Notes: generated by a model not told the origin, from the letters alone. Positions 2,112-30,992 are shown, counted from the whole stretch's first letter. The stretch is 63,972 nt of DNA, filler included, from Salisapilia sapeloensis CBS 127946 (GCA_023334545.1; 16 parts of 16 records of this genome joined end to end with filler, not necessarily neighbours in it); one strand, 5' to 3'. Numbers and translations: made by a program.

Positions 2112-3024
2112 CTAGAGAATTACAAGAGTAGATGGAAGTAATACCATTCGTTTCGACATGAGTTTTCGACGTGGTGGGCTTTGTTCCATGGCGTCGTCCA
2201 CGGCGCTTCGATGGCGCTTGGCGTTGCGGCCGACGGACGCAATAGTGGATGTGGACTCTTCGACTGCTTGCGATATATTCTCCACCGTCTTCTGTAGCTC
2301 TGCTTCACTCTATTGCATCCCATTAGGCACAGTGGATGCAGTCGATCAGTATAAAAGTACATTTTCATAAACGCGTTTGATGGTTTCGATCTCGGCCGGG
2401 TCGGTATAGACACCTTGTTCCAAATCTGGTTGACTAGCGTACGATGTAAGGCCTGAAAGAACATTTAAAGATAACATAGATGTACGTGAAGGTGACATCA
2501 CTAGCTTCCTTGCGTTGGTTTTCCATCTTTAGCTTTGTATGTTCTTTCACGAGGTCAAAAACCTACGAATTAAACCAAGGTGAATATAAGCATATCACAA
2601 ATACAGATTCTAGACATACCTTTTCACGTTTCTCTTTAATAGAAGCTTCTATCTCCTTGATCCGTTTATCCTCCTCTGCGACTTTGGACGCAAGCTCCTG
2701 GTCCACTTCTTCCATATCACCTACTCCATCGCATAAATACATTTTCATAGCGATCTCATACTATAAAACTACCTTGATCAGTGGGATCATAATGACGGAT
2801 AGCATTTGAAAAGACATTCGCGACAACGTCGTTCACGTGTGCCCTCGCGACCTAGACATTTGTAAATAGATAGAACAAAGTCGTACATCACACCTAACAC
2901 GTACATCTTTCTGTGCAGCAGACATGTTTGGCTGCACCTTGAGTGCAGCAGCGATTGCCTTCTCCGTGCATCGACGCTGTGCTTCCTTAAGCTCTGCATA
3001 CGAGTACTTGCGTTCGTCGCCCAT
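2112..3024 (-). CDS. Multi-exon coiled-coil protein, possibly kinetochore Nsl1/Mis14-like
   Basis: Exons join through short GT..AG introns (e.g. 2904-2852): MGDERKYSYAELKEAQRRC...QKD|VARAHVNDVVANVFSNAIRHYDPTDQ|GDMEEVDQELASKVAEEDKRIKEIEASIKEKREK|VFDLVKEH... The helix followed by an 'EEVDQELASKV' coiled coil recalls the Nsl1 EPFD-L segment. The gene is well supported; the family and the 3' end are uncertain. Confidence 0.55.
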
Positions 3025-3225
3025 ACTCCCTCGAAGGCGCGAAAAGCACGGTCTTTTGAAATGTCCCACATTGCAGCCGACCTTCTTCATATAAAAACAT
3101 GTGTACGTAATGCATCCAAATCGAGACGCAATATGACGACTGTGTCATCGAACATATCATCCTCCATTTCCATTTTCTCACCTGATCTCCGTCTACTATC
3201 CTCCTTTCTAGCGCTAGAGGCAAGT

Positions 3226-6132
3226 ATGAGGTTAACAGGAGACATTGGGTCTGCACCATCATCTCCATGGAGACAGGAAGCTGTGCCAACGCCGCCTGGA
3301 AGCGGAAATTTGCTTCATCAGGGCAAATTGTTACGTCGAGACCGGACGTTCTTGACGTGGAAGTGGAGAGAATTTGTACTAGAACGTAATCGGTTGCAAT
3401 ACTTTAGCATGAAAGGAACTAGGAAAGGGGAAGTATCTTTGACGGCAGGAAGTACGCCCATTACGATTCGAATCACGGATAGTCTCAAGCCGTTTGGATT
3501 TGTGCTGTTCATCAAGGACGAGAAATTGACATTAGCAGCTACCAGTGACGCCGAACGTCGACGTTGGGTAGATGTCTTCTGTGACGTCTTCCACGTAAGT
3601 GTAGAACAGGAGAACGACCGAAAGACTAAACCGACGTACTTGCCTGTACCGGATGCATCGACGCCACAGGCCACACCGAAAGGTTCTGCGCATTCGAATG
3701 TGTCTGAAATGTCCGAGTTCAGTCACTCTTTATCCACAAACTCGGATAATGCACGTAGCTTTCGATACAATCGATCCGTTCCACAGGAAGTGATTCCGAT
3801 CCTAGAGTCACGCATGACGTACGGACCGTTAAAAGAAACGTTCTCTCATGTTACTTTCCCTCCTTCCCTTGCCAATGGAGACTCTCTCGTCGGTGTCGGT
3901 CCTATCGTCCGTAGGCTGAATTTCACCGATGAACGTGTCCTCGCCGTCGGACTGTACATTGATCCGTCCGAAGCAGCCCCTCAGCTACAGCCATTCCACG
4001 GCCGCTCGCTTAGTAGTCTCAACGGCGATCAGCGTTTCTACGACCACTTGATCCACCACACCACATTCCGCCGCTCGTTCGTCTTCACCAGTCGCAAACG
4101 CATATCCAAGTCAGTGCTCCAAGCCGTACTACGCGACGAGATCTCACCACGTATTGCTGGAGACGCTGACGCACTCGACACGTTCTTATCATTGATCGAA
4201 AAGTCGTTAAAGAAAGCAGAATCGATGGTCTTGCGACTAGAAGGCGGAGCGCACTGTGAGTTCCGTCTTCGAGGTCACGTCTATCCTCCAATCGCGTCTC
4301 GATCCCTGTGTAAGTGCTTCCAAGCCATGTTCTTTGACGTCGGGAGCATCCAACAGGACGCCAAAAGAGGTCTTATCCAACGTCTGCCGAGTCTGTGGGG
4401 AAGTGAAGAGCCGGATGCACATGATGAGATCTATGGTAGTTTACACATGGACGAGGAAGACGACGATACGGACTCGGACTTTGACATGGACGCGCCGTTG
4501 CTAGCTGGAAACGACTCCGACGAAGACGACAGTGACGATGAACTCATGACAGAAGCTCGACGACGCAGTCAGTCGTCTCGAGAGCGTCGATTGAGCGTGA
4601 AAGACAAGCTCGATGAGCTCGATGAACGGACGCATGAACTCTTGCGTCGAGAAGGACGTAGTCTCGTCCCTCACTTTGGACCGATGTTGGATCCAGTCTC
4701 CCACGCGTCTTTCGCAGGCGACCTCATCGTCGACCGAAGCACTTTGCTCGGCACATGGTCACAACGTATGACACAAGAAGTGGAAGAGCAAGACCAGTTG
4801 CACGAGACGCACTCACAACGTTTCTCAGTTGGTTTATATGTCCAACCAGGGGAAGCGAGCGAGAATTTACTCAAGTACAAGGGATTATCGATCGGTAGCA
4901 TTGTGCAGGACCCAGACTTTTTCCGTCGCTTTGCAGACGGACCATTTGCAAAGCACCTGGTCTTTAAAGTCGCTGGACGCATGACGTTAGGACATGTCCT
5001 AGAACACATGATCTCTAGGCTGAAACCAGTCAAGACAGAAGCAACGGACGCCCCTGACACACCTGTGGATGGCACTGTCGACCACTTGCATAGCATCTAC
5101 CTAGAACATAAACTACTGGAGCTGTCACCGACGGATGAAGTACATGTGTCGATAGATAGTGCAGGTAATTGTGTGTTGCGTCTCGGACGTAAGACGGTCG
5201 CTCCGGCTGAAGCAGAGGAGGATGAAGTGGAGGCATTAGCAGTCGCAGAAGAGATCCAGCTGCCTCCACCACCGTTCGCGACGCTGCTTCAGAGTTTGTT
5301 CTATGGCTACAAGCGATCGAATGACGAGTGTCGAGCGCAGTTACTACAGCGTCTACCGAGTTTATTGGATCTCGCACGAGATGACTTGGTGCATACGTAT
5401 CATGATGAGATCCAAGTACTCAAGGAGAACTACAAGCGACAGAAACCGGAGAATCGTGTCAAGGCAGGATATTTGGCCTTGTCATTTGATAAGAAACGCA
5501 AGATGAAAAAGAATGAAGATGGTGGGAAAGAAGAAGTGATGGTGACGTCGAGGTGGAGTAAACGATGGTGTCGTCTCGATGGCGTGACGTTCTCGTACTA
5601 TGCACACAAACGGAACCGGAAAGCTCGAGACGTGGTCGATTTGAGGCAATGTGAAATCATGGAAATCGATGCCACGAACACGAATTCCGAATTGTCAAGG
5701 TTTGTCGAAGATAAAAAGAGTGGGAAGGAACAAGCGTCCATTACGTTTGCGATCGTCAAGCCGAATAGAGAGATCTTAGCGCTACGTACGGAAAGTATCT
5801 ACGAAGGGGAGGAATGGATCGAGTCGCTTTTGGATGCCAGTAAAGTGTCCAGTTTGGAGAGTGGGACGGATCCAAGTGATGATATTGAAGGGCAGAAGAG
5901 GAGGAAGAGTTCAGTGGTGAAGCCAGCGTCTGGCGAGTTGGCAGAGGAAGGAGGGAACACGGGGTGGGAAGAAGAAGAAGAGGATGTCGAGTACAAACGA
6001 GGCTCGTTGCTACTGTGGCTAAAGGAGGATGTTCGCCATCTGATCATCTTCGTATCGTTCGTGCTTTTGCTACGAGTGATCACGAAGCGGAGGACGGTGG
6101 AGGTTGGAGCAGATTTGACAGACGCCGTGTAG
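3226..6132 (+). CDS. PH - chalcone isomerase-like x2 - PH - C-terminal TM protein
   Basis: Intronless ORF (open from 3061; likely start 3226). PH1: LLHQGKLLRR..WKWREFVL..LQYF..LTLAATSDAERRRWVD. CHI-fold 1: VTFPPSL..LVGVGPIVRR..VLAVGLYID..MFFDVGSIQQDAKRGLIQRL. Acidic linker, then a degenerate second CHI copy (FSVGLYVQP..CRAQLLQRLP). PH2: VKAGYL..WSKRWCRLDG..GEEWIESL. Hydrophobic tail HLIIFVSFVLLLRVI. Confidence 0.85.
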   Translation: MRLTGDIGSAPSSPWRQEAVPTPPGSGNLLHQGKLLRRDRTFLTWKWREFVLERNRLQYFSMKGTRKGEVSLTAGSTPITIRITDSLKPFGFVLFIKDEKLTLAATSDAERRRWVDVFCDVFHVSVEQENDRKTKPTYLPVPDASTPQATPKGSAHSNVSEMSEFSHSLSTNSDNARSFRYNRSVPQEVIPILESRMTYGPLKETFSHVTFPPSLANGDSLVGVGPIVRRLNFTDERVLAVGLYIDPSEAAPQLQPFHGRSLSSLNGDQRFYDHLIHHTTFRRSFVFTSRKRISKSVLQAVLRDEISPRIAGDADALDTFLSLIEKSLKKAESMVLRLEGGAHCEFRLRGHVYPPIASRSLCKCFQAMFFDVGSIQQDAKRGLIQRLPSLWGSEEPDAHDEIYGSLHMDEEDDDTDSDFDMDAPLLAGNDSDEDDSDDELMTEARRRSQSSRERRLSVKDKLDELDERTHELLRREGRSLVPHFGPMLDPVSHASFAGDLIVDRSTLLGTWSQRMTQEVEEQDQLHETHSQRFSVGLYVQPGEASENLLKYKGLSIGSIVQDPDFFRRFADGPFAKHLVFKVAGRMTLGHVLEHMISRLKPVKTEATDAPDTPVDGTVDHLHSIYLEHKLLELSPTDEVHVSIDSAGNCVLRLGRKTVAPAEAEEDEVEALAVAEEIQLPPPPFATLLQSLFYGYKRSNDECRAQLLQRLPSLLDLARDDLVHTYHDEIQVLKENYKRQKPENRVKAGYLALSFDKKRKMKKNEDGGKEEVMVTSRWSKRWCRLDGVTFSYYAHKRNRKARDVVDLRQCEIMEIDATNTNSELSRFVEDKKSGKEQASITFAIVKPNREILALRTESIYEGEEWIESLLDASKVSSLESGTDPSDDIEGQKRRKSSVVKPASGELAEEGGNTGWEEEEEDVEYKRGSLLLWLKEDVRHLIIFVSFVLLLRVITKRRTVEVGADLTDAV

Positions 6133-29271: not shown

Positions 29272-29527
29272 GAACGTATACGGTCTTTGGCTGATCATCA
29301 TCAAAACGATGTCGATGACAATTATCAGTGCTAGAGTAATGGTCACCATCTCGCCGTTCAGTAGGAGCCTGTGTATGATGTTCTGGAGGGTCATGTGCAC
29401 TGCTATTATATTCATGATTATGCTCTTCTTCTTCTTGTTGTGATGCTTCGTGTGTAGTGGCACGTTGTAACCAGTCGCGTCCAAATAGCCGTTCCATGCG
29501 CTGGCGATATCCTCTTGTGTAGACCAT
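29272..29527 (-). CDS. Small ORF immediately downstream of the capsid ORF (runs off the contig)
   Basis: The ATG sits 1 nt after the capsid TGA (TGAcATG): MVYTRGYRQRMERLFGRDWLQ... A second frame is also open over the same interval and ends in a TM-like stretch. Confidence 0.4.
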
Positions 29528-29528
29528 G

Positions 29529-30773
29529 TCAATTTGCAGAATGAAGCTTCGACATCTGATCGTCTGCTCCAAATATAACGTTTGGCATCGTCTCCGTCCA
29601 CGTAGGATGGTACCAGCGGTCGTCTTGGAACTCTTTGAACTGGACAATGTACCGCACCTGAAAATCAATGTTGCACAGCGTATTGTACTCTTTGCTTTCT
29701 CCAAACAATGGATCTCTGTACAGTAGGACCTGTAGCTGTTCTTGGTACGTAGGAGGTGTCCCTACCTTGGTCCACACCTTACGATGCTCGTCAAATTCTG
29801 GATGTGCCTTGGCGGAGTTTGCTTTTATGTAGCGTTTCACTGTGGTATTGATACCTTCTCCGTACATGTGTGCCTTCACTCGGTCCCATTGAATATCCCT
29901 GTACTGCTGCATTTCACGCAATGGTCTGTCTGTTTGTAGCATGTATCGATTGGTACCCGTGTCTGGATCCGTACTCTTGTTCGTAAGCTTTGATCCAATT
30001 AAGATATCGTTGCCTGCTTTCCTGCTCATGTTACGGAAACGCATTATAATCTCGCATCCTAGTACGGTGTAGTACTTGTACAGCTTATGACAGTAATACT
30101 CCAGCCCGTACTTGAACGTTGGAGTCTGTTCATGCGCTGGATAGTCACCGTTATATGTGGTTCCAAACTCCCACGGTTGGCCAATTTGTCTGGTGCCTTG
30201 ATGATAATCATGCATGAATGCTGTGTGTAGTCCGCCTGGAACGGTCATCGGATTATCATAATAGTTCGTACAAATGGAGAATGACTGTGCGCTTTCGTAG
30301 TCAATGTGCTTCATGCCTCCTTGGAACTGACACGGGAAGACTACTGTCTTTGTCTGTGGTAGCCACGCTGTCTCTGGCTCGTGAATAAGGACCTCCGTTT
30401 CTTTCGAAATGGTGTCAATGCCAGCACCGTCCATGGGATTATCCGTTGGTACTTCCGCCATAGCTACTTGCGTGTTTTGTGTATCTGCGGCCTTTACACT
30501 AGCTGGATGGTAGTCGTGGCTTTGCTTATTGGCCTTGGTGTTCTCCTGTGTAGCCTCTCCGTCAGGGTGTTCCTTCCGCTTTCGTAAGCGCTGTGGGGTT
30601 GCCTGCAAATCTTGAAATGAAGCAGTCTTGCCTTGATCTTGTTCTTCACTCTTGCCGAATACCGAGTGATAGGCTTGATCCAATTGGCCAACGTCTTCTT
30701 TATACTGCTCATAGGCCTGTTGATATGATAGGCCTTCGCGAATTAGTTCTGCAATACGAGGTATCCACGACAT
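29529..30773 (-). CDS. Putative ssDNA virus capsid protein (parvo-like hybrid/CRESS-type jelly-roll); endogenous element or co-sequenced virus
   Basis: Intronless 414-aa ORF. The N-terminal region is hydrophilic with a basic NLS-like motif (PQRLRKRK), and an internal Met/Gly segment (MAEVPTDNPMDGAG) resembles a VP2 start. The Tyr/Thr/Val-rich beta core has KLYKYYTVLGCEIIMRFRN and NIDFQVRYIVQFKE, typical strand motifs of ssDNA virus capsids. Recognised by eye only. Confidence 0.72.
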   Translation of the reverse strand: MSWIPRIAELIREGLSYQQAYEQYKEDVGQLDQAYHSVFGKSEEQDQGKTASFQDLQATPQRLRKRKEHPDGEATQENTKANKQSHDYHPASVKAADTQNTQVAMAEVPTDNPMDGAGIDTISKETEVLIHEPETAWLPQTKTVVFPCQFQGGMKHIDYESAQSFSICTNYYDNPMTVPGGLHTAFMHDYHQGTRQIGQPWEFGTTYNGDYPAHEQTPTFKYGLEYYCHKLYKYYTVLGCEIIMRFRNMSRKAGNDILIGSKLTNKSTDPDTGTNRYMLQTDRPLREMQQYRDIQWDRVKAHMYGEGINTTVKRYIKANSAKAHPEFDEHRKVWTKVGTPPTYQEQLQVLLYRDPLFGESKEYNTLCNIDFQVRYIVQFKEFQDDRWYHPTWTETMPNVIFGADDQMSKLHSAN

Positions 30774-30797
30774 CTAGCAAATTGAAAAATGATGGAT

Positions 30798-30890
30798 TTA
30801 AAGGTTATAGTAAAGATCTTTGATGCGCTGCTGATAGTACTCTGGACTACGTATTGGTTCTCCAGTGGGGCAGTCACGGCAGTAGTCCCA
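30798..30890 (-). CDS. C-terminal 30 aa of an upstream ORF on the viral contig (possibly Rep or an accessory protein)
   Basis: The frame is open from the contig edge: WDYCRDCPTGEPIRSPEYYQQRIKDLYYNL*, with its stop 24 nt before the capsid ATG. Confidence 0.4.
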   Translation of the reverse strand, partial: WDYCRDCPTGEPIRSPEYYQQRIKDLYYNL

Positions 30891-30992
30891 GCNNNNNNNN
30901 NNNNNNNNNNNNNNNNNNNNNNNNNNNNNNNNNNNNTTAATTAATTAANNNNNNNNNNNNNNNNNNNNNNNNNNNNNNNNNNNNNNNNNNNN

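What the first reader, a model, noticed from the sequence alone, without database searches (positions are those of the whole stretch)
29529..30773. Intact ssDNA-virus-like capsid gene on its own contig in an oomycete assembly
Seen in sequence: a 414-aa intronless ORF with no stops or frameshifts, unlike the intron-rich host genes and the decayed repeats elsewhere. It has a hydrophilic N-terminal extension with an NLS-like PQRLRKRK, an internal Met/Gly start-like segment, and beta-strand motifs (KLYKYYTVLGCEIIMRF; DFQVRYIVQFKE). Established knowledge: parvo-like hybrid viruses (PHV/NIH-CQV group) combine a CRESS-type Rep with a parvovirus-like capsid and have been linked to oomycete hosts through endogenous copies; to my recollection they are now classified as Oomyviridae. 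Inference: this is either a recent or retained endogenous viral element or a replicating virus of this oomycete, probably an undescribed member. Both flanks are assembly spacers, so integration cannot be decided here.
Basis: partly seen in the sequence, partly recalled or inferred. Interest (0 to 1): 0.88.

Follow-up and report, generated by a model that had tools for sequence, protein, structure and literature searches.

The report
Oomyvirus-like capsid gene, genome fragment
This 1.6-kb piece is an intact fragment (end of Rep, whole capsid gene, start of a small third gene) of a divergent member of the "parvo-like hybrid virus" group now classified as Oomyviridae; it could tie such a virus to a living host, but this group is also a notorious contaminant of DNA-extraction kits and the piece cannot tell these apart.

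Summary
The 414-aa ORF (29529-30773, minus strand) is real and intact.

The whole piece is collinear, at 88.7% nt identity, with one 4138-nt metagenome contig ordered antisense ORF / Rep / Cap / ORF3. All three window genes show purifying selection: capsid dN/dS 0.30, ORF3 0.13, Rep end 30/30 aa identical.

A profile of the capsid finds 843 protein clusters. Contig sizes were checked for some relatives and were small (1.4-3.8 kb).

The AlphaFold model has a single jelly-roll core. Its best matches are capsids of named parvo-like hybrid viruses, which are ICTV exemplars of Oomyviridae. Next come CRESS capsids, and circovirus capsids among solved structures. No phospholipase A2 domain is present.

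The lineage (window plus one relative) is the most divergent in the family sample.

The identity is therefore supported: a new member of a known family. Whether the DNA is a virus of the sequenced organism, a very recent endogenous copy, or reagent or environmental contamination cannot be decided from this piece. A 2026 study found this virus group on the silica membranes of commercial extraction kits.

The parts
30798..30892 (-). 3' end of a Rep gene (last 30 codons plus stop), cut off by the edge of the piece
   Evidence: The 30 aa are identical to the C-terminus of the 390-aa Rep of L001. There are 2 nt differences, both silent. The L001 Rep has an HUH-like HIH motif and a GEGKT Walker A motif. 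Profile hits to the AAV Rep40/68 SF3 helicase give E 1e-5.
30774..30797 (-). 24-nt spacer between the Rep stop and the capsid ATG
   Evidence: Read directly from the sequence. The same arrangement occurs in L001.
29529..30773 (-). Complete capsid (Cap) gene, 414 aa plus stop
   Evidence: Intact ORF. It is 83% identical to P0001 with dN/dS 0.30. The profile family has 843 clusters. The AF2 model has mean pLDDT 74. Best fold matches are capsids of parvo-like hybrid viruses.
30657..30767 (-). Cap aa 3-39: two predicted N-terminal helices, acidic (aa 1-45, pI 4.6), in the place where some relatives carry a PLA2 domain
   Evidence: Model helices 3-12 and 17-39 have pLDDT of about 90. There is no Pfam hit. 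In alignment A1 the PLA2 segment of P0003-5 is absent here. Charge.
30360..30656 (-). Cap aa 40-138: hydrophilic, predicted disordered linker holding the basic NLS-like PQRLRKRK (30573-30596) and the family-conserved SKET motif (30396-30407)
   Evidence: pLDDT is below 50 for aa 58-120. Motif positions. K124, E125 and T126 are invariant in A1; E125 and T126 are nearly invariant in A2.
29604..30359 (-). Cap aa 139-390: single jelly-roll core, including a variable, low-confidence loop region (aa 161-227, about 30093-30292)
   Evidence: The beta strands have pLDDT 85-97. Foldseek matches PHV and CRESS capsids and circovirus capsids. The loop region is 60-71% nt identical to L001, against about 90% elsewhere.
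29272..29527 (-). 5' part (85 codons) of ORF3, a small acidic and His-rich protein gene (94 aa in L001), cut off by the edge of the piece
   Evidence: The region is 95.7% nt identical to L001. In this frame there are 7 silent and 4 replacement changes (omega 0.13, binomial p 0.002). The other open frame has 0 silent and 11 replacement changes. A 91-aa ORF in the same position in L004 is similar (E 5e-5) and also begins MV[Y/H]TR.

Best explanation
The piece is a fragment of the genome of a divergent, PLA2-less member of the parvo-like hybrid virus group (family Oomyviridae, order Lineavirales, phylum Cressdnaviricota). It carries the end of the Rep gene, the complete capsid gene and the start of a small downstream gene (ORF3), all on one strand and all still functional.

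**Shown**
- Gene order, intactness and purifying selection.
- A single jelly-roll fold most like the capsids of named oomyviruses.

**Inferred from the circovirus/CRESS homologues**
- About 60 copies of the 414-aa protein would form a small T=1 icosahedral shell around a linear ssDNA genome of about 4 kb.
- The jelly-roll (aa 139-390) would form the shell.
- The variable loops (aa 161-227) would lie on the surface.
- The disordered N-terminal arm, with its basic PQRLRKRK patch, would serve nuclear import and/or DNA contact.

**Inferred for replication**
The genome would be replicated by the HUH-endonuclease/SF3-helicase Rep encoded just upstream.

**Not decided**
The DNA behaves as viral sequence that has not decayed. 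The piece does not show whether it sits in virions or episomes of the sequenced organism, in a very recent chromosomal insertion, or came in with reagents.
For: **The window's own genes**
- The ORF is intact.
- The whole 1621 nt is collinear with L001 positions 2438-4058 at 88.7% identity.
- The Rep C-terminus is 30/30 aa identical, with only silent changes.
- Cap dN/dS is 0.30. ORF3 dN/dS is 0.13, p 0.002.

**The capsid family**
- The capsid profile finds 843 cluster representatives at E<=1e-3 and 342 at E<=1e-30.
- The cluster members whose contig sizes were looked up lie on contigs of 1.4-3.8 kb.
- The window capsid hits these proteins at 50-79 bits.

**Structure**
- The AF2 model has core pLDDT of 85-97.
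- BFVD top hits are capsids of Pavo cristatus, Luscinia sibilans, Cygnus columbianus and Grus japonensis parvo-like hybrid viruses and of Forsythia and Lactuca parvo-like viruses, at E 2e-23 to 6e-16. CRESS capsids follow at about 1e-12.
- Of these, the Pavo cristatus, Grus japonensis and Forsythia suspensa viruses are ICTV Oomyviridae exemplars.
- PDB top hits are PCV2, bat circovirus and BFDV capsids.

**Relatives' genomes**
- Relative L004 (Rep 57% identical to that of L001) has 82-nt inverted terminal repeats and the same layout of antisense ORF, Rep, Cap and ORF3.
Against: - Only 30 aa of Rep and no genome terminus lie in the piece, so the two features on which the family is formally defined (Rep phylogeny and a linear genome with terminal repeats) are known only from relatives.
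- The capsid is just 20-26% identical to every family member except P0001.
- No Pfam, PHROG or PDB sequence hit exists for the capsid itself.
- The T=1 shell and the role of the N-terminal arm are analogies, not results.
Confidence: 0.88

Rival explanations
1. Origin sub-hypothesis A: the DNA is not from the sequenced organism. It is viral DNA carried in by silica-based extraction reagents, or by the environment or culture medium, and it assembled as a short stray contig.
For: - PHV-group genomes were recovered directly from the silica membranes of 29 commercial kits, interspersed through both major clades of the group (PMC13141889). The founding member NIH-CQV was itself a spin-column contaminant.
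- The piece is a short contig made only of viral sequence, with both ends inside viral genes.
- Relatives turn up in many unrelated public assemblies, always on small contigs. One Rep cluster alone (P0269) is on 129 contigs.
Against: - This particular lineage is rare. The exact protein is on no other record.
- Only one cluster at 83% identity exists among about 5.8 billion clusters.
- A 24-mer shared by the window and L001 occurs nowhere in the viral, metagenome or prokaryote-genome collections.
- An industrial-scale kit contaminant would be expected to recur.
Confidence: 0.35
2. Origin sub-hypothesis B: it is an extant, non-integrated virus of the sequenced organism (said by the reader to be an oomycete), assembled only in part.
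For: - Three adjacent genes are intact and under purifying selection.
- Divergence from L001 is mosaic. dS is 1.25 in the predicted surface loops, against 0.10 in the N-terminal arm and 0.15 in ORF3. This is expected for a virus evolving as a virus, not for neutral decay.
- Oomyviridae are predicted to infect stramenopiles, and transcripts of such genes exist in Plasmopara halstedii and Aphanomyces invadans.
- The lineage is not a common database contaminant.
Against: - Nothing in the piece links it to a host.
- Only 1.6 kb of an expected genome of about 4 kb was assembled.
- According to the literature read here, no oomyvirus has ever been isolated from a host.
Confidence: 0.25
3. Origin sub-hypothesis C: it is a very recent endogenous viral element in the host chromosome, and its flanks were not assembled.
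For: [quoted passage not shown]
- The contig breaks at both ends inside the element, as happens with repeated or polymorphic insertions.
Against: - There is no host flank, stop, frameshift or truncation in 1621 nt.
- Selection signatures are those of functional genes, although most of that divergence could predate an insertion.
- The nearest relative lies on a contig of free-genome size.
Confidence: 0.25
4. It is not an oomyvirus gene at all. It would instead be a parvovirus or circovirus capsid, or a cellular gene.
For: - Relatives of the neighbouring Rep hit Pfam Parvo_NS1 (26 of 28, best E 4e-8), and their profile hits AAV Rep40/68 (E 1e-5).
- A few family capsids hit Circo_capsid weakly (7 of 111, best E 6.5e-5).
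- Circovirus capsids are the best solved-structure matches.
Against: - There is no Parvo_coat or PLA2 hit.
- A densovirus is only rank 17 in the PDB search.
- Rep and Cap lie on the same strand, and the capsid is about twice the size of a circovirus capsid.
- Named PHV capsids beat CRESS capsids by about 10 orders of magnitude.
- The 120 best Rep relatives lie on contigs of no more than 4.4 kb, and the capsid relatives checked lie on contigs of no more than 3.8 kb.
- No cellular homologue was found.
Confidence: 0.03

Closest known systems
Oomyviridae (order Lineavirales, class Arfiviricetes), i.e. the parvo-like hybrid virus / NIH-CQV group; genera include Nicoomyvirus and Avoomyvirus
   Same: - A capsid jelly-roll whose best structural matches are capsids of exemplar viruses of this family.
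- Family-wide capsid motifs: SKET, LYxYYTVLGCE and KYIVQFK.
- A relative with inverted terminal repeats.
   Different: - The capsid is only 20-26% identical to other family members, whereas they share about 42% with each other in the core.
- Among the 28 Reps compared, that of the nearest relative has the lowest median identity to the rest (60%, against 66-74% for the 25 database Reps; L002 and L003 are 61-63%).
- There is no PLA2 domain. This is common among the relatives sampled: only 14 of 111 have one.
- The L001 contig is longer (at least 4138 nt) and carries an ORF3 that some members (L002, L003) do not show.
- Genus and species placement was not tested, because the exemplar sequences could not be fetched.
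Circoviridae and uncultured CRESS-DNA virus capsids
   Same: A single jelly-roll fold. PCV2, bat circovirus and BFDV capsids are the best solved-structure matches (E 6.5e-7 and weaker; TM 0.36-0.55 normalised to the target among the best matches). CRESS capsids match at about 1e-12 in BFVD.
   Different: - The capsid is about twice as long.
- The N-terminus is acidic and helical, followed by a disordered arm, instead of a short arginine-rich N-terminus.
- Rep and Cap are co-oriented.
- Relatives have linear genomes with terminal repeats rather than circles.
Parvoviridae
   Same: - Relatives have a small linear ssDNA genome with terminal repeats.
- The Rep has an SF3 helicase that matches AAV Rep40/68.
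- Some family members carry a VP1u-type PLA2 domain.
   Different: - The window protein has no PLA2 and no Parvo_coat match.
- Its fold is closer to circovirus capsids than to parvovirus capsids.
- The literature treats the 'parvovirus' label of this group as a misannotation.

Membership tests
Oomyviridae | Capsid protein homologous to those of parvo-like hybrid viruses (jelly-roll) | tested here: met
   Foldseek against BFVD gives capsids of named PHVs at E 2e-23 to 7e-15 with probability 1.00. These names are ICTV exemplars. At the sequence level the protein belongs to the same profile family as PLA2-bearing capsids.
Oomyviridae | Rep (HUH endonuclease plus SF3 helicase) that clusters with the group within Arfiviricetes | tested here: inconclusive
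   The window holds only the last 30 aa, which are identical to the L001 Rep. The L001 Rep has an HIH motif and a Walker A motif and is 57-65% identical to more than 1000 Reps on small contigs. No phylogeny with ICTV exemplars could be made.
Oomyviridae | Linear ssDNA genome with inverted terminal repeats | not testable with these tools
   Both ends of the piece lie inside genes. L001 shows no terminal repeats or hairpins, so that contig is probably incomplete. Relative L004 has 82-nt repeats that are 96% complementary.
Oomyviridae | Rep and Cap co-oriented, with Cap directly downstream of Rep | tested here: met
   The Rep stop at 30798-30800 lies 24 nt before the Cap ATG at 30773, on the same strand. 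L001-L004 have the same arrangement.
Oomyviridae | PLA2 domain at the capsid N-terminus (the feature that gave the group its 'parvo-like' name) | tested here: not met
   No Pfam hit even at E<=10. The feature is not universal: only 14 of 111 relatives have it.
Oomyviridae | Stramenopile (oomycete) host | not testable with these tools
   There is no host sequence in the piece, and no eukaryote genome collection was on hand. Host links come from the literature only.
Parvoviridae | Parvovirus-type VP capsid protein (Parvo_coat fold, VP1u PLA2) | tested here: not met
   No Pfam or PDB sequence hit. In the PDB fold search, circoviruses rank first and a densovirus ranks 17th.
Circoviridae | Ambisense Rep and Cap on a circular genome; capsid of about 230 aa with an arginine-rich N-terminus | tested here: not met
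   Rep and Cap are on the same strand. The capsid is 414 aa and its N-terminal 45 aa have pI 4.6.
Endogenous viral element | Host flanks and/or disabling mutations | tested here: not met
   There are no stops or frameshifts in the three genes, and no non-viral sequence within 29272-30892. Absence of flanks in a 1.6-kb contig does not exclude integration.

The most novel reading that the evidence does not exclude
The sequence is from an extant oomyvirus that actually lives in the cultured organism whose genome was assembled. That would be the first direct link of a living host to Oomyviridae, a family whose hosts are so far only inferred from endogenous copies. It would also belong to a lineage divergent enough (capsid about 23%, Rep about 60% identical to other members) to be a new genus.
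Probability: 0.2. Interest if true: 0.75.

Novelty: new member of a known kind. Interest (0 to 1): 0.45.

Why it matters
Oomyviridae was created in 2025 almost entirely from metagenomic sequences. Its hosts are inferred only from endogenous copies in oomycete genomes, and much of its public sequence record is suspected to be contamination from extraction kits. An intact, selected, rare lineage found in the assembly of a cultured organism would be a concrete case in which host association can be checked with existing reads.

If the sequence is host-associated, it gives the family its first tangible host. If it is reagent-derived, it is a contaminant contig that should be removed from the assembly, and it extends the known diversity of kit-borne sequences.

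It also adds a conserved third gene (ORF3) and a divergent capsid lineage to the description of the family.

Tried and rejected
**Searches that found nothing for the capsid**
- Pfam, PHROGs and PDB sequence searches with the capsid alone found nothing significant.
- A PDB profile search with 111 family members also found nothing.

**Structure prediction**
- The first AF2 run, on 7 sequences, was too poor to use (pLDDT 51). The second, on 111 sequences, was used.

**Attempts to identify sources and names**
- An exact-protein look-up for the window capsid found nothing on record.
- Cluster look-ups for ten family members gave no names.
- Literature searches for the assembly and sample identifiers of relatives (GCA_040384225.1, JGI 3300068286, SRR32678464) found nothing, so their sources stay unknown.
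- The Naccache 2013 paper is not held.

**Scans for closer relatives**
- Scans of the viral and metagenome collections with the capsid found none.
- Scans of the viral, metagenome and prokaryote-genome collections with a 24-mer shared by the window and L001 found none.

**Hypotheses rejected**
- A 72-aa overlapping ORF in the capsid's N-terminal region (30494-30712) is open in both genomes. It was rejected as a gene because omega is about 1 in every frame, with only 10 changes.
- The hydrophobic alternative frame downstream of the capsid, which the JGI gene caller chose in L001, was rejected because it shows 0 silent and 11 replacement changes.
- The antisense ORFs of L001 and L004 show no similarity.

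- In one search my reference for ORF3 was one base out of frame (29526 instead of 29527), so that PHROG result is void. The correct frame was used from then on.

Full report
**1. Observation**

The piece (window 29272-30892, 1621 nt, 46.7% G+C, no N) carries on its minus strand an uninterrupted ATG-to-TGA ORF of 414 aa at 29529-30773. At this composition, a run of 414 sense codons has a chance of about 3e-9. No plus-strand ORF exceeds 76 aa. The quoted peptide motifs are all present at aa 60-67, 105-118, 230-246 and 370-381.

**2. What else is in the piece**

In fact the remaining DNA is also coding, on the same strand.
- Upstream, 30801-30892 is the last 30 codons of an ORF cut by the edge of the piece. 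Its stop is at 30798-30800, and 24 nt separate it from the capsid ATG.
- Downstream, an ATG at 29527 lies 1 nt after the capsid stop. It opens a third ORF that runs off the other edge after 85 codons.

**3. Nearest relative**

The protein search found one close relative, P0001 (411 aa, 83% identity). It is a single sequence on a single 4138-nt JGI metagenome contig, L001. The whole piece aligns with L001 positions 2438-4058 at 88.7% nt identity.

L001 has four genes:
- an antisense ORF of 213-263 aa
- a 390-aa Rep (plus strand)
- the 411-aa capsid
- a 94-aa ORF3

The window's 30 upstream residues are identical to the Rep C-terminus, and the only 2 nt differences are silent.

Selection was measured against L001:
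- The capsid has dN/dS 0.30.
- Downstream of the capsid, two frames are open in both genomes. In the MVYTRG frame, 7 of 11 differences are silent (omega 0.13, binomial p 0.002). In the hydrophobic frame chosen by the JGI gene caller, 0 of 11 are silent.

ORF3 is therefore a real gene in the acidic, His-rich frame.

Divergence is mosaic:
- 96-98% nt identity in the Rep end, in capsid aa 46-138 and in ORF3
- 60-71% in the capsid segment encoding aa 161-227, where dS is 1.25, against 0.10 in the N-terminal arm

**4. Family**

The capsid alone has no Pfam, PHROG or PDB sequence match.

Weaker hits of the first search (23-33% identity) include proteins with the parvoviral VP1u-type PLA2 domain, PF08398. 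A profile of these found 843 representatives of 50%-identity clusters at E<=1e-3 and 342 at E<=1e-30. The window capsid alone hits them at 50-79 bits. Members of ten clusters were looked up, and their contigs were 1.4-3.8 kb. Among 111 members, 14 carry PLA2 and 7 weakly match Circo_capsid.

With this alignment, AlphaFold2 gave a model with mean pLDDT 74 and a beta-sandwich core at pLDDT 85-97.

Foldseek results:
- Against predicted viral structures, the top matches are capsids of Pavo cristatus, Luscinia sibilans, Cygnus columbianus, Grus japonensis, Phoenicopterus roseus and Accipiter gentilis parvo-like hybrid viruses, and of Lactuca sativa and Forsythia suspensa parvo-like viruses (E 2e-23 to 7e-15). 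Generic CRESS-DNA virus capsids follow at about 1e-12.
- Against solved structures, PCV2, bat circovirus and BFDV capsids lead (E 6.5e-7 and weaker). A densovirus is rank 17.

The ICTV 2025 table lists Pavo cristatus PHV (MW046350), Grus japonensis PHV (MW046412), the Forsythia suspensa parvo-like viruses and NIH-CQV (KC617868) as exemplars of species of genus Nicoomyvirus, family Oomyviridae, order Lineavirales.

**5. Rep and genome ends, known from relatives only**

The L001 Rep has an HIH (HUH-type) motif at residues 68-70 and a GEGKT Walker A motif. It has more than 1000 relatives at 57-65% identity, and the 120 best lie on contigs of no more than 4.4 kb. A profile of them matches the SF3 helicase of AAV Rep40/68 (E 1e-5) and Pfam Parvo_NS1.

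One relative in IMG/VR, L004 (3753 nt, Rep 57% identical), has these features:
- 82-nt inverted terminal repeats, 96% complementary, with small terminal hairpins
- the same four-gene layout, including a 91-aa ORF in the ORF3 position
- an ORF3 homologue that begins MVHTR and is similar to ORF3 of L001 (E 5e-5)

L003 shows short imperfect terminal repeats and no ORF3. L001 shows no terminal repeats, so it is probably not complete.

**6. Anatomy and likely function of the capsid protein**

Predicted parts:
- aa 3-39: two confident helices, acidic (aa 1-45, pI 4.6), in the place where other members carry PLA2.
- aa 40-138: hydrophilic and predicted disordered. It holds the basic PQRLRKRK patch and ends at the family-wide SKET motif.
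- aa 139-390: the jelly-roll, with a low-confidence variable loop region at aa 161-227.
- A short C-terminal tail follows.

By analogy with circovirus and CRESS capsids, I infer that 60 subunits form a T=1 shell with the variable loops outside. I also infer that the N-terminal arm acts in nuclear targeting or DNA contact. None of this was tested. Without PLA2, the membrane-breaching mechanism proposed for parvoviral VP1u cannot apply to this member.

**7. How divergent it is**

In the 111-member alignment, the window capsid and P0001 have the lowest median core identity to the rest: 23-25%, against a family median of 42%. Among the 28 Reps compared, that of L001 has the lowest median identity: 60%, against 66-74% for the 25 database Reps, with L002 and L003 at 61-63%.

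The lineage is also rare:
- The exact protein is on no record.
- There is one cluster at 83% identity.
- Neither capsid-based scans nor a shared 24-mer found further copies in the viral, metagenome or prokaryote-genome collections.

**8. Where the DNA comes from**

Three origins remain.

(a) *Reagent or environmental contamination.* The founding member of the group was a spin-column contaminant. A 2026 study recovered PHV genomes from the silica membranes of 29 kits, spread over both clades. A short stray contig made only of viral sequence fits this. The rarity of this lineage in public data argues against a widespread kit contaminant, but not against a lot-specific one.

(b) *A virus of the sequenced organism.* Intact genes, purifying selection and loop-focused divergence fit this. 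Transcripts of such genes are reported in Plasmopara halstedii and Aphanomyces invadans. Nothing in the piece links it to a host.

(c) *A very recent endogenous copy.* Such copies are reported in several oomycetes. There is no flank and no damage here, which is uninformative for a 1.6-kb contig.

I put these at roughly 0.35, 0.25 and 0.25. They cannot be separated with the sequence in hand.

**9. Verdict**

The identity call is well supported: this is a capsid gene, with neighbouring Rep and ORF3 fragments, of a divergent PLA2-less oomyvirus-like genome. It is a new member of a known family, possibly of genus rank.

The capsid fold is circovirus/CRESS-like rather than parvovirus-like.

Interest is moderate. 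It would be high only if read-level evidence tied the sequence to the organism.

**10. Slip**

The ORF3 query was one base out of frame, so that result is void. The consensus lines printed by the alignment tool were not used.

Noticed in passing
window 29272-29601 (minus strand); L001 3729-4100: Two overlapping reading frames are open downstream of the capsid in both the window and L001: the acidic, His-rich ORF3 and a hydrophobic, TM-like frame. The JGI gene call for L001 took the hydrophobic frame, but the substitution pattern (0 silent, 11 replacement) argues against it.
   Followed up: yes
window 30093-30292 (Cap aa 161-227) versus the rest of the piece: Divergence from L001 is strongly mosaic: 60-71% nt identity (dS 1.25) in the predicted surface-loop segment, against 92-99% in the N-terminal arm, the Rep end and ORF3. 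This suggests recombination or rapid loop evolution. Alignment uncertainty within the loop was not excluded.
   Followed up: partly
L004 1-82 and 3672-3753: An IMG/VR relative carries 82-nt inverted terminal repeats (96% complementary), each with small hairpins (z about -2.5 to -2.9). This indicates a complete linear genome of 3753 nt.
   Followed up: yes
L001 115-906 (-), L002 76-387 (-), L004 146-637 (-): Each relative has an antisense ORF (103-263 aa) at the left end of the genome. Those of L001 and L004 show no detectable similarity to each other, and the L001 and L002 ORFs have no significant Pfam hit. The L002 ORF was not compared with the others. Their function is unknown.
   Followed up: partly
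L003 1996-2358: The relative from NCBI assembly GCA_040384225.1 (contig JAWVHC010041127.1, 3665 nt) has an extra 120-aa ORF between Rep and Cap, and no ORF3. The organism of that assembly could not be identified.
   Followed up: partly
Rep relatives P0267-P0275: A set of nearly identical 390-aa Reps sits on many separate contigs of about 3292 nt in Logan assemblies (one on 129 contigs). This is the pattern expected of a recurrent, possibly reagent-borne sequence.
   Followed up: no
window 30494-30712 (minus strand, +1 frame within Cap): A 72-aa basic ORF overlapping the capsid N-terminal region is open in both the window and L001. With only 10 differences and omega of about 1 in all frames, there is no evidence that it is a gene.
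   Followed up: yes
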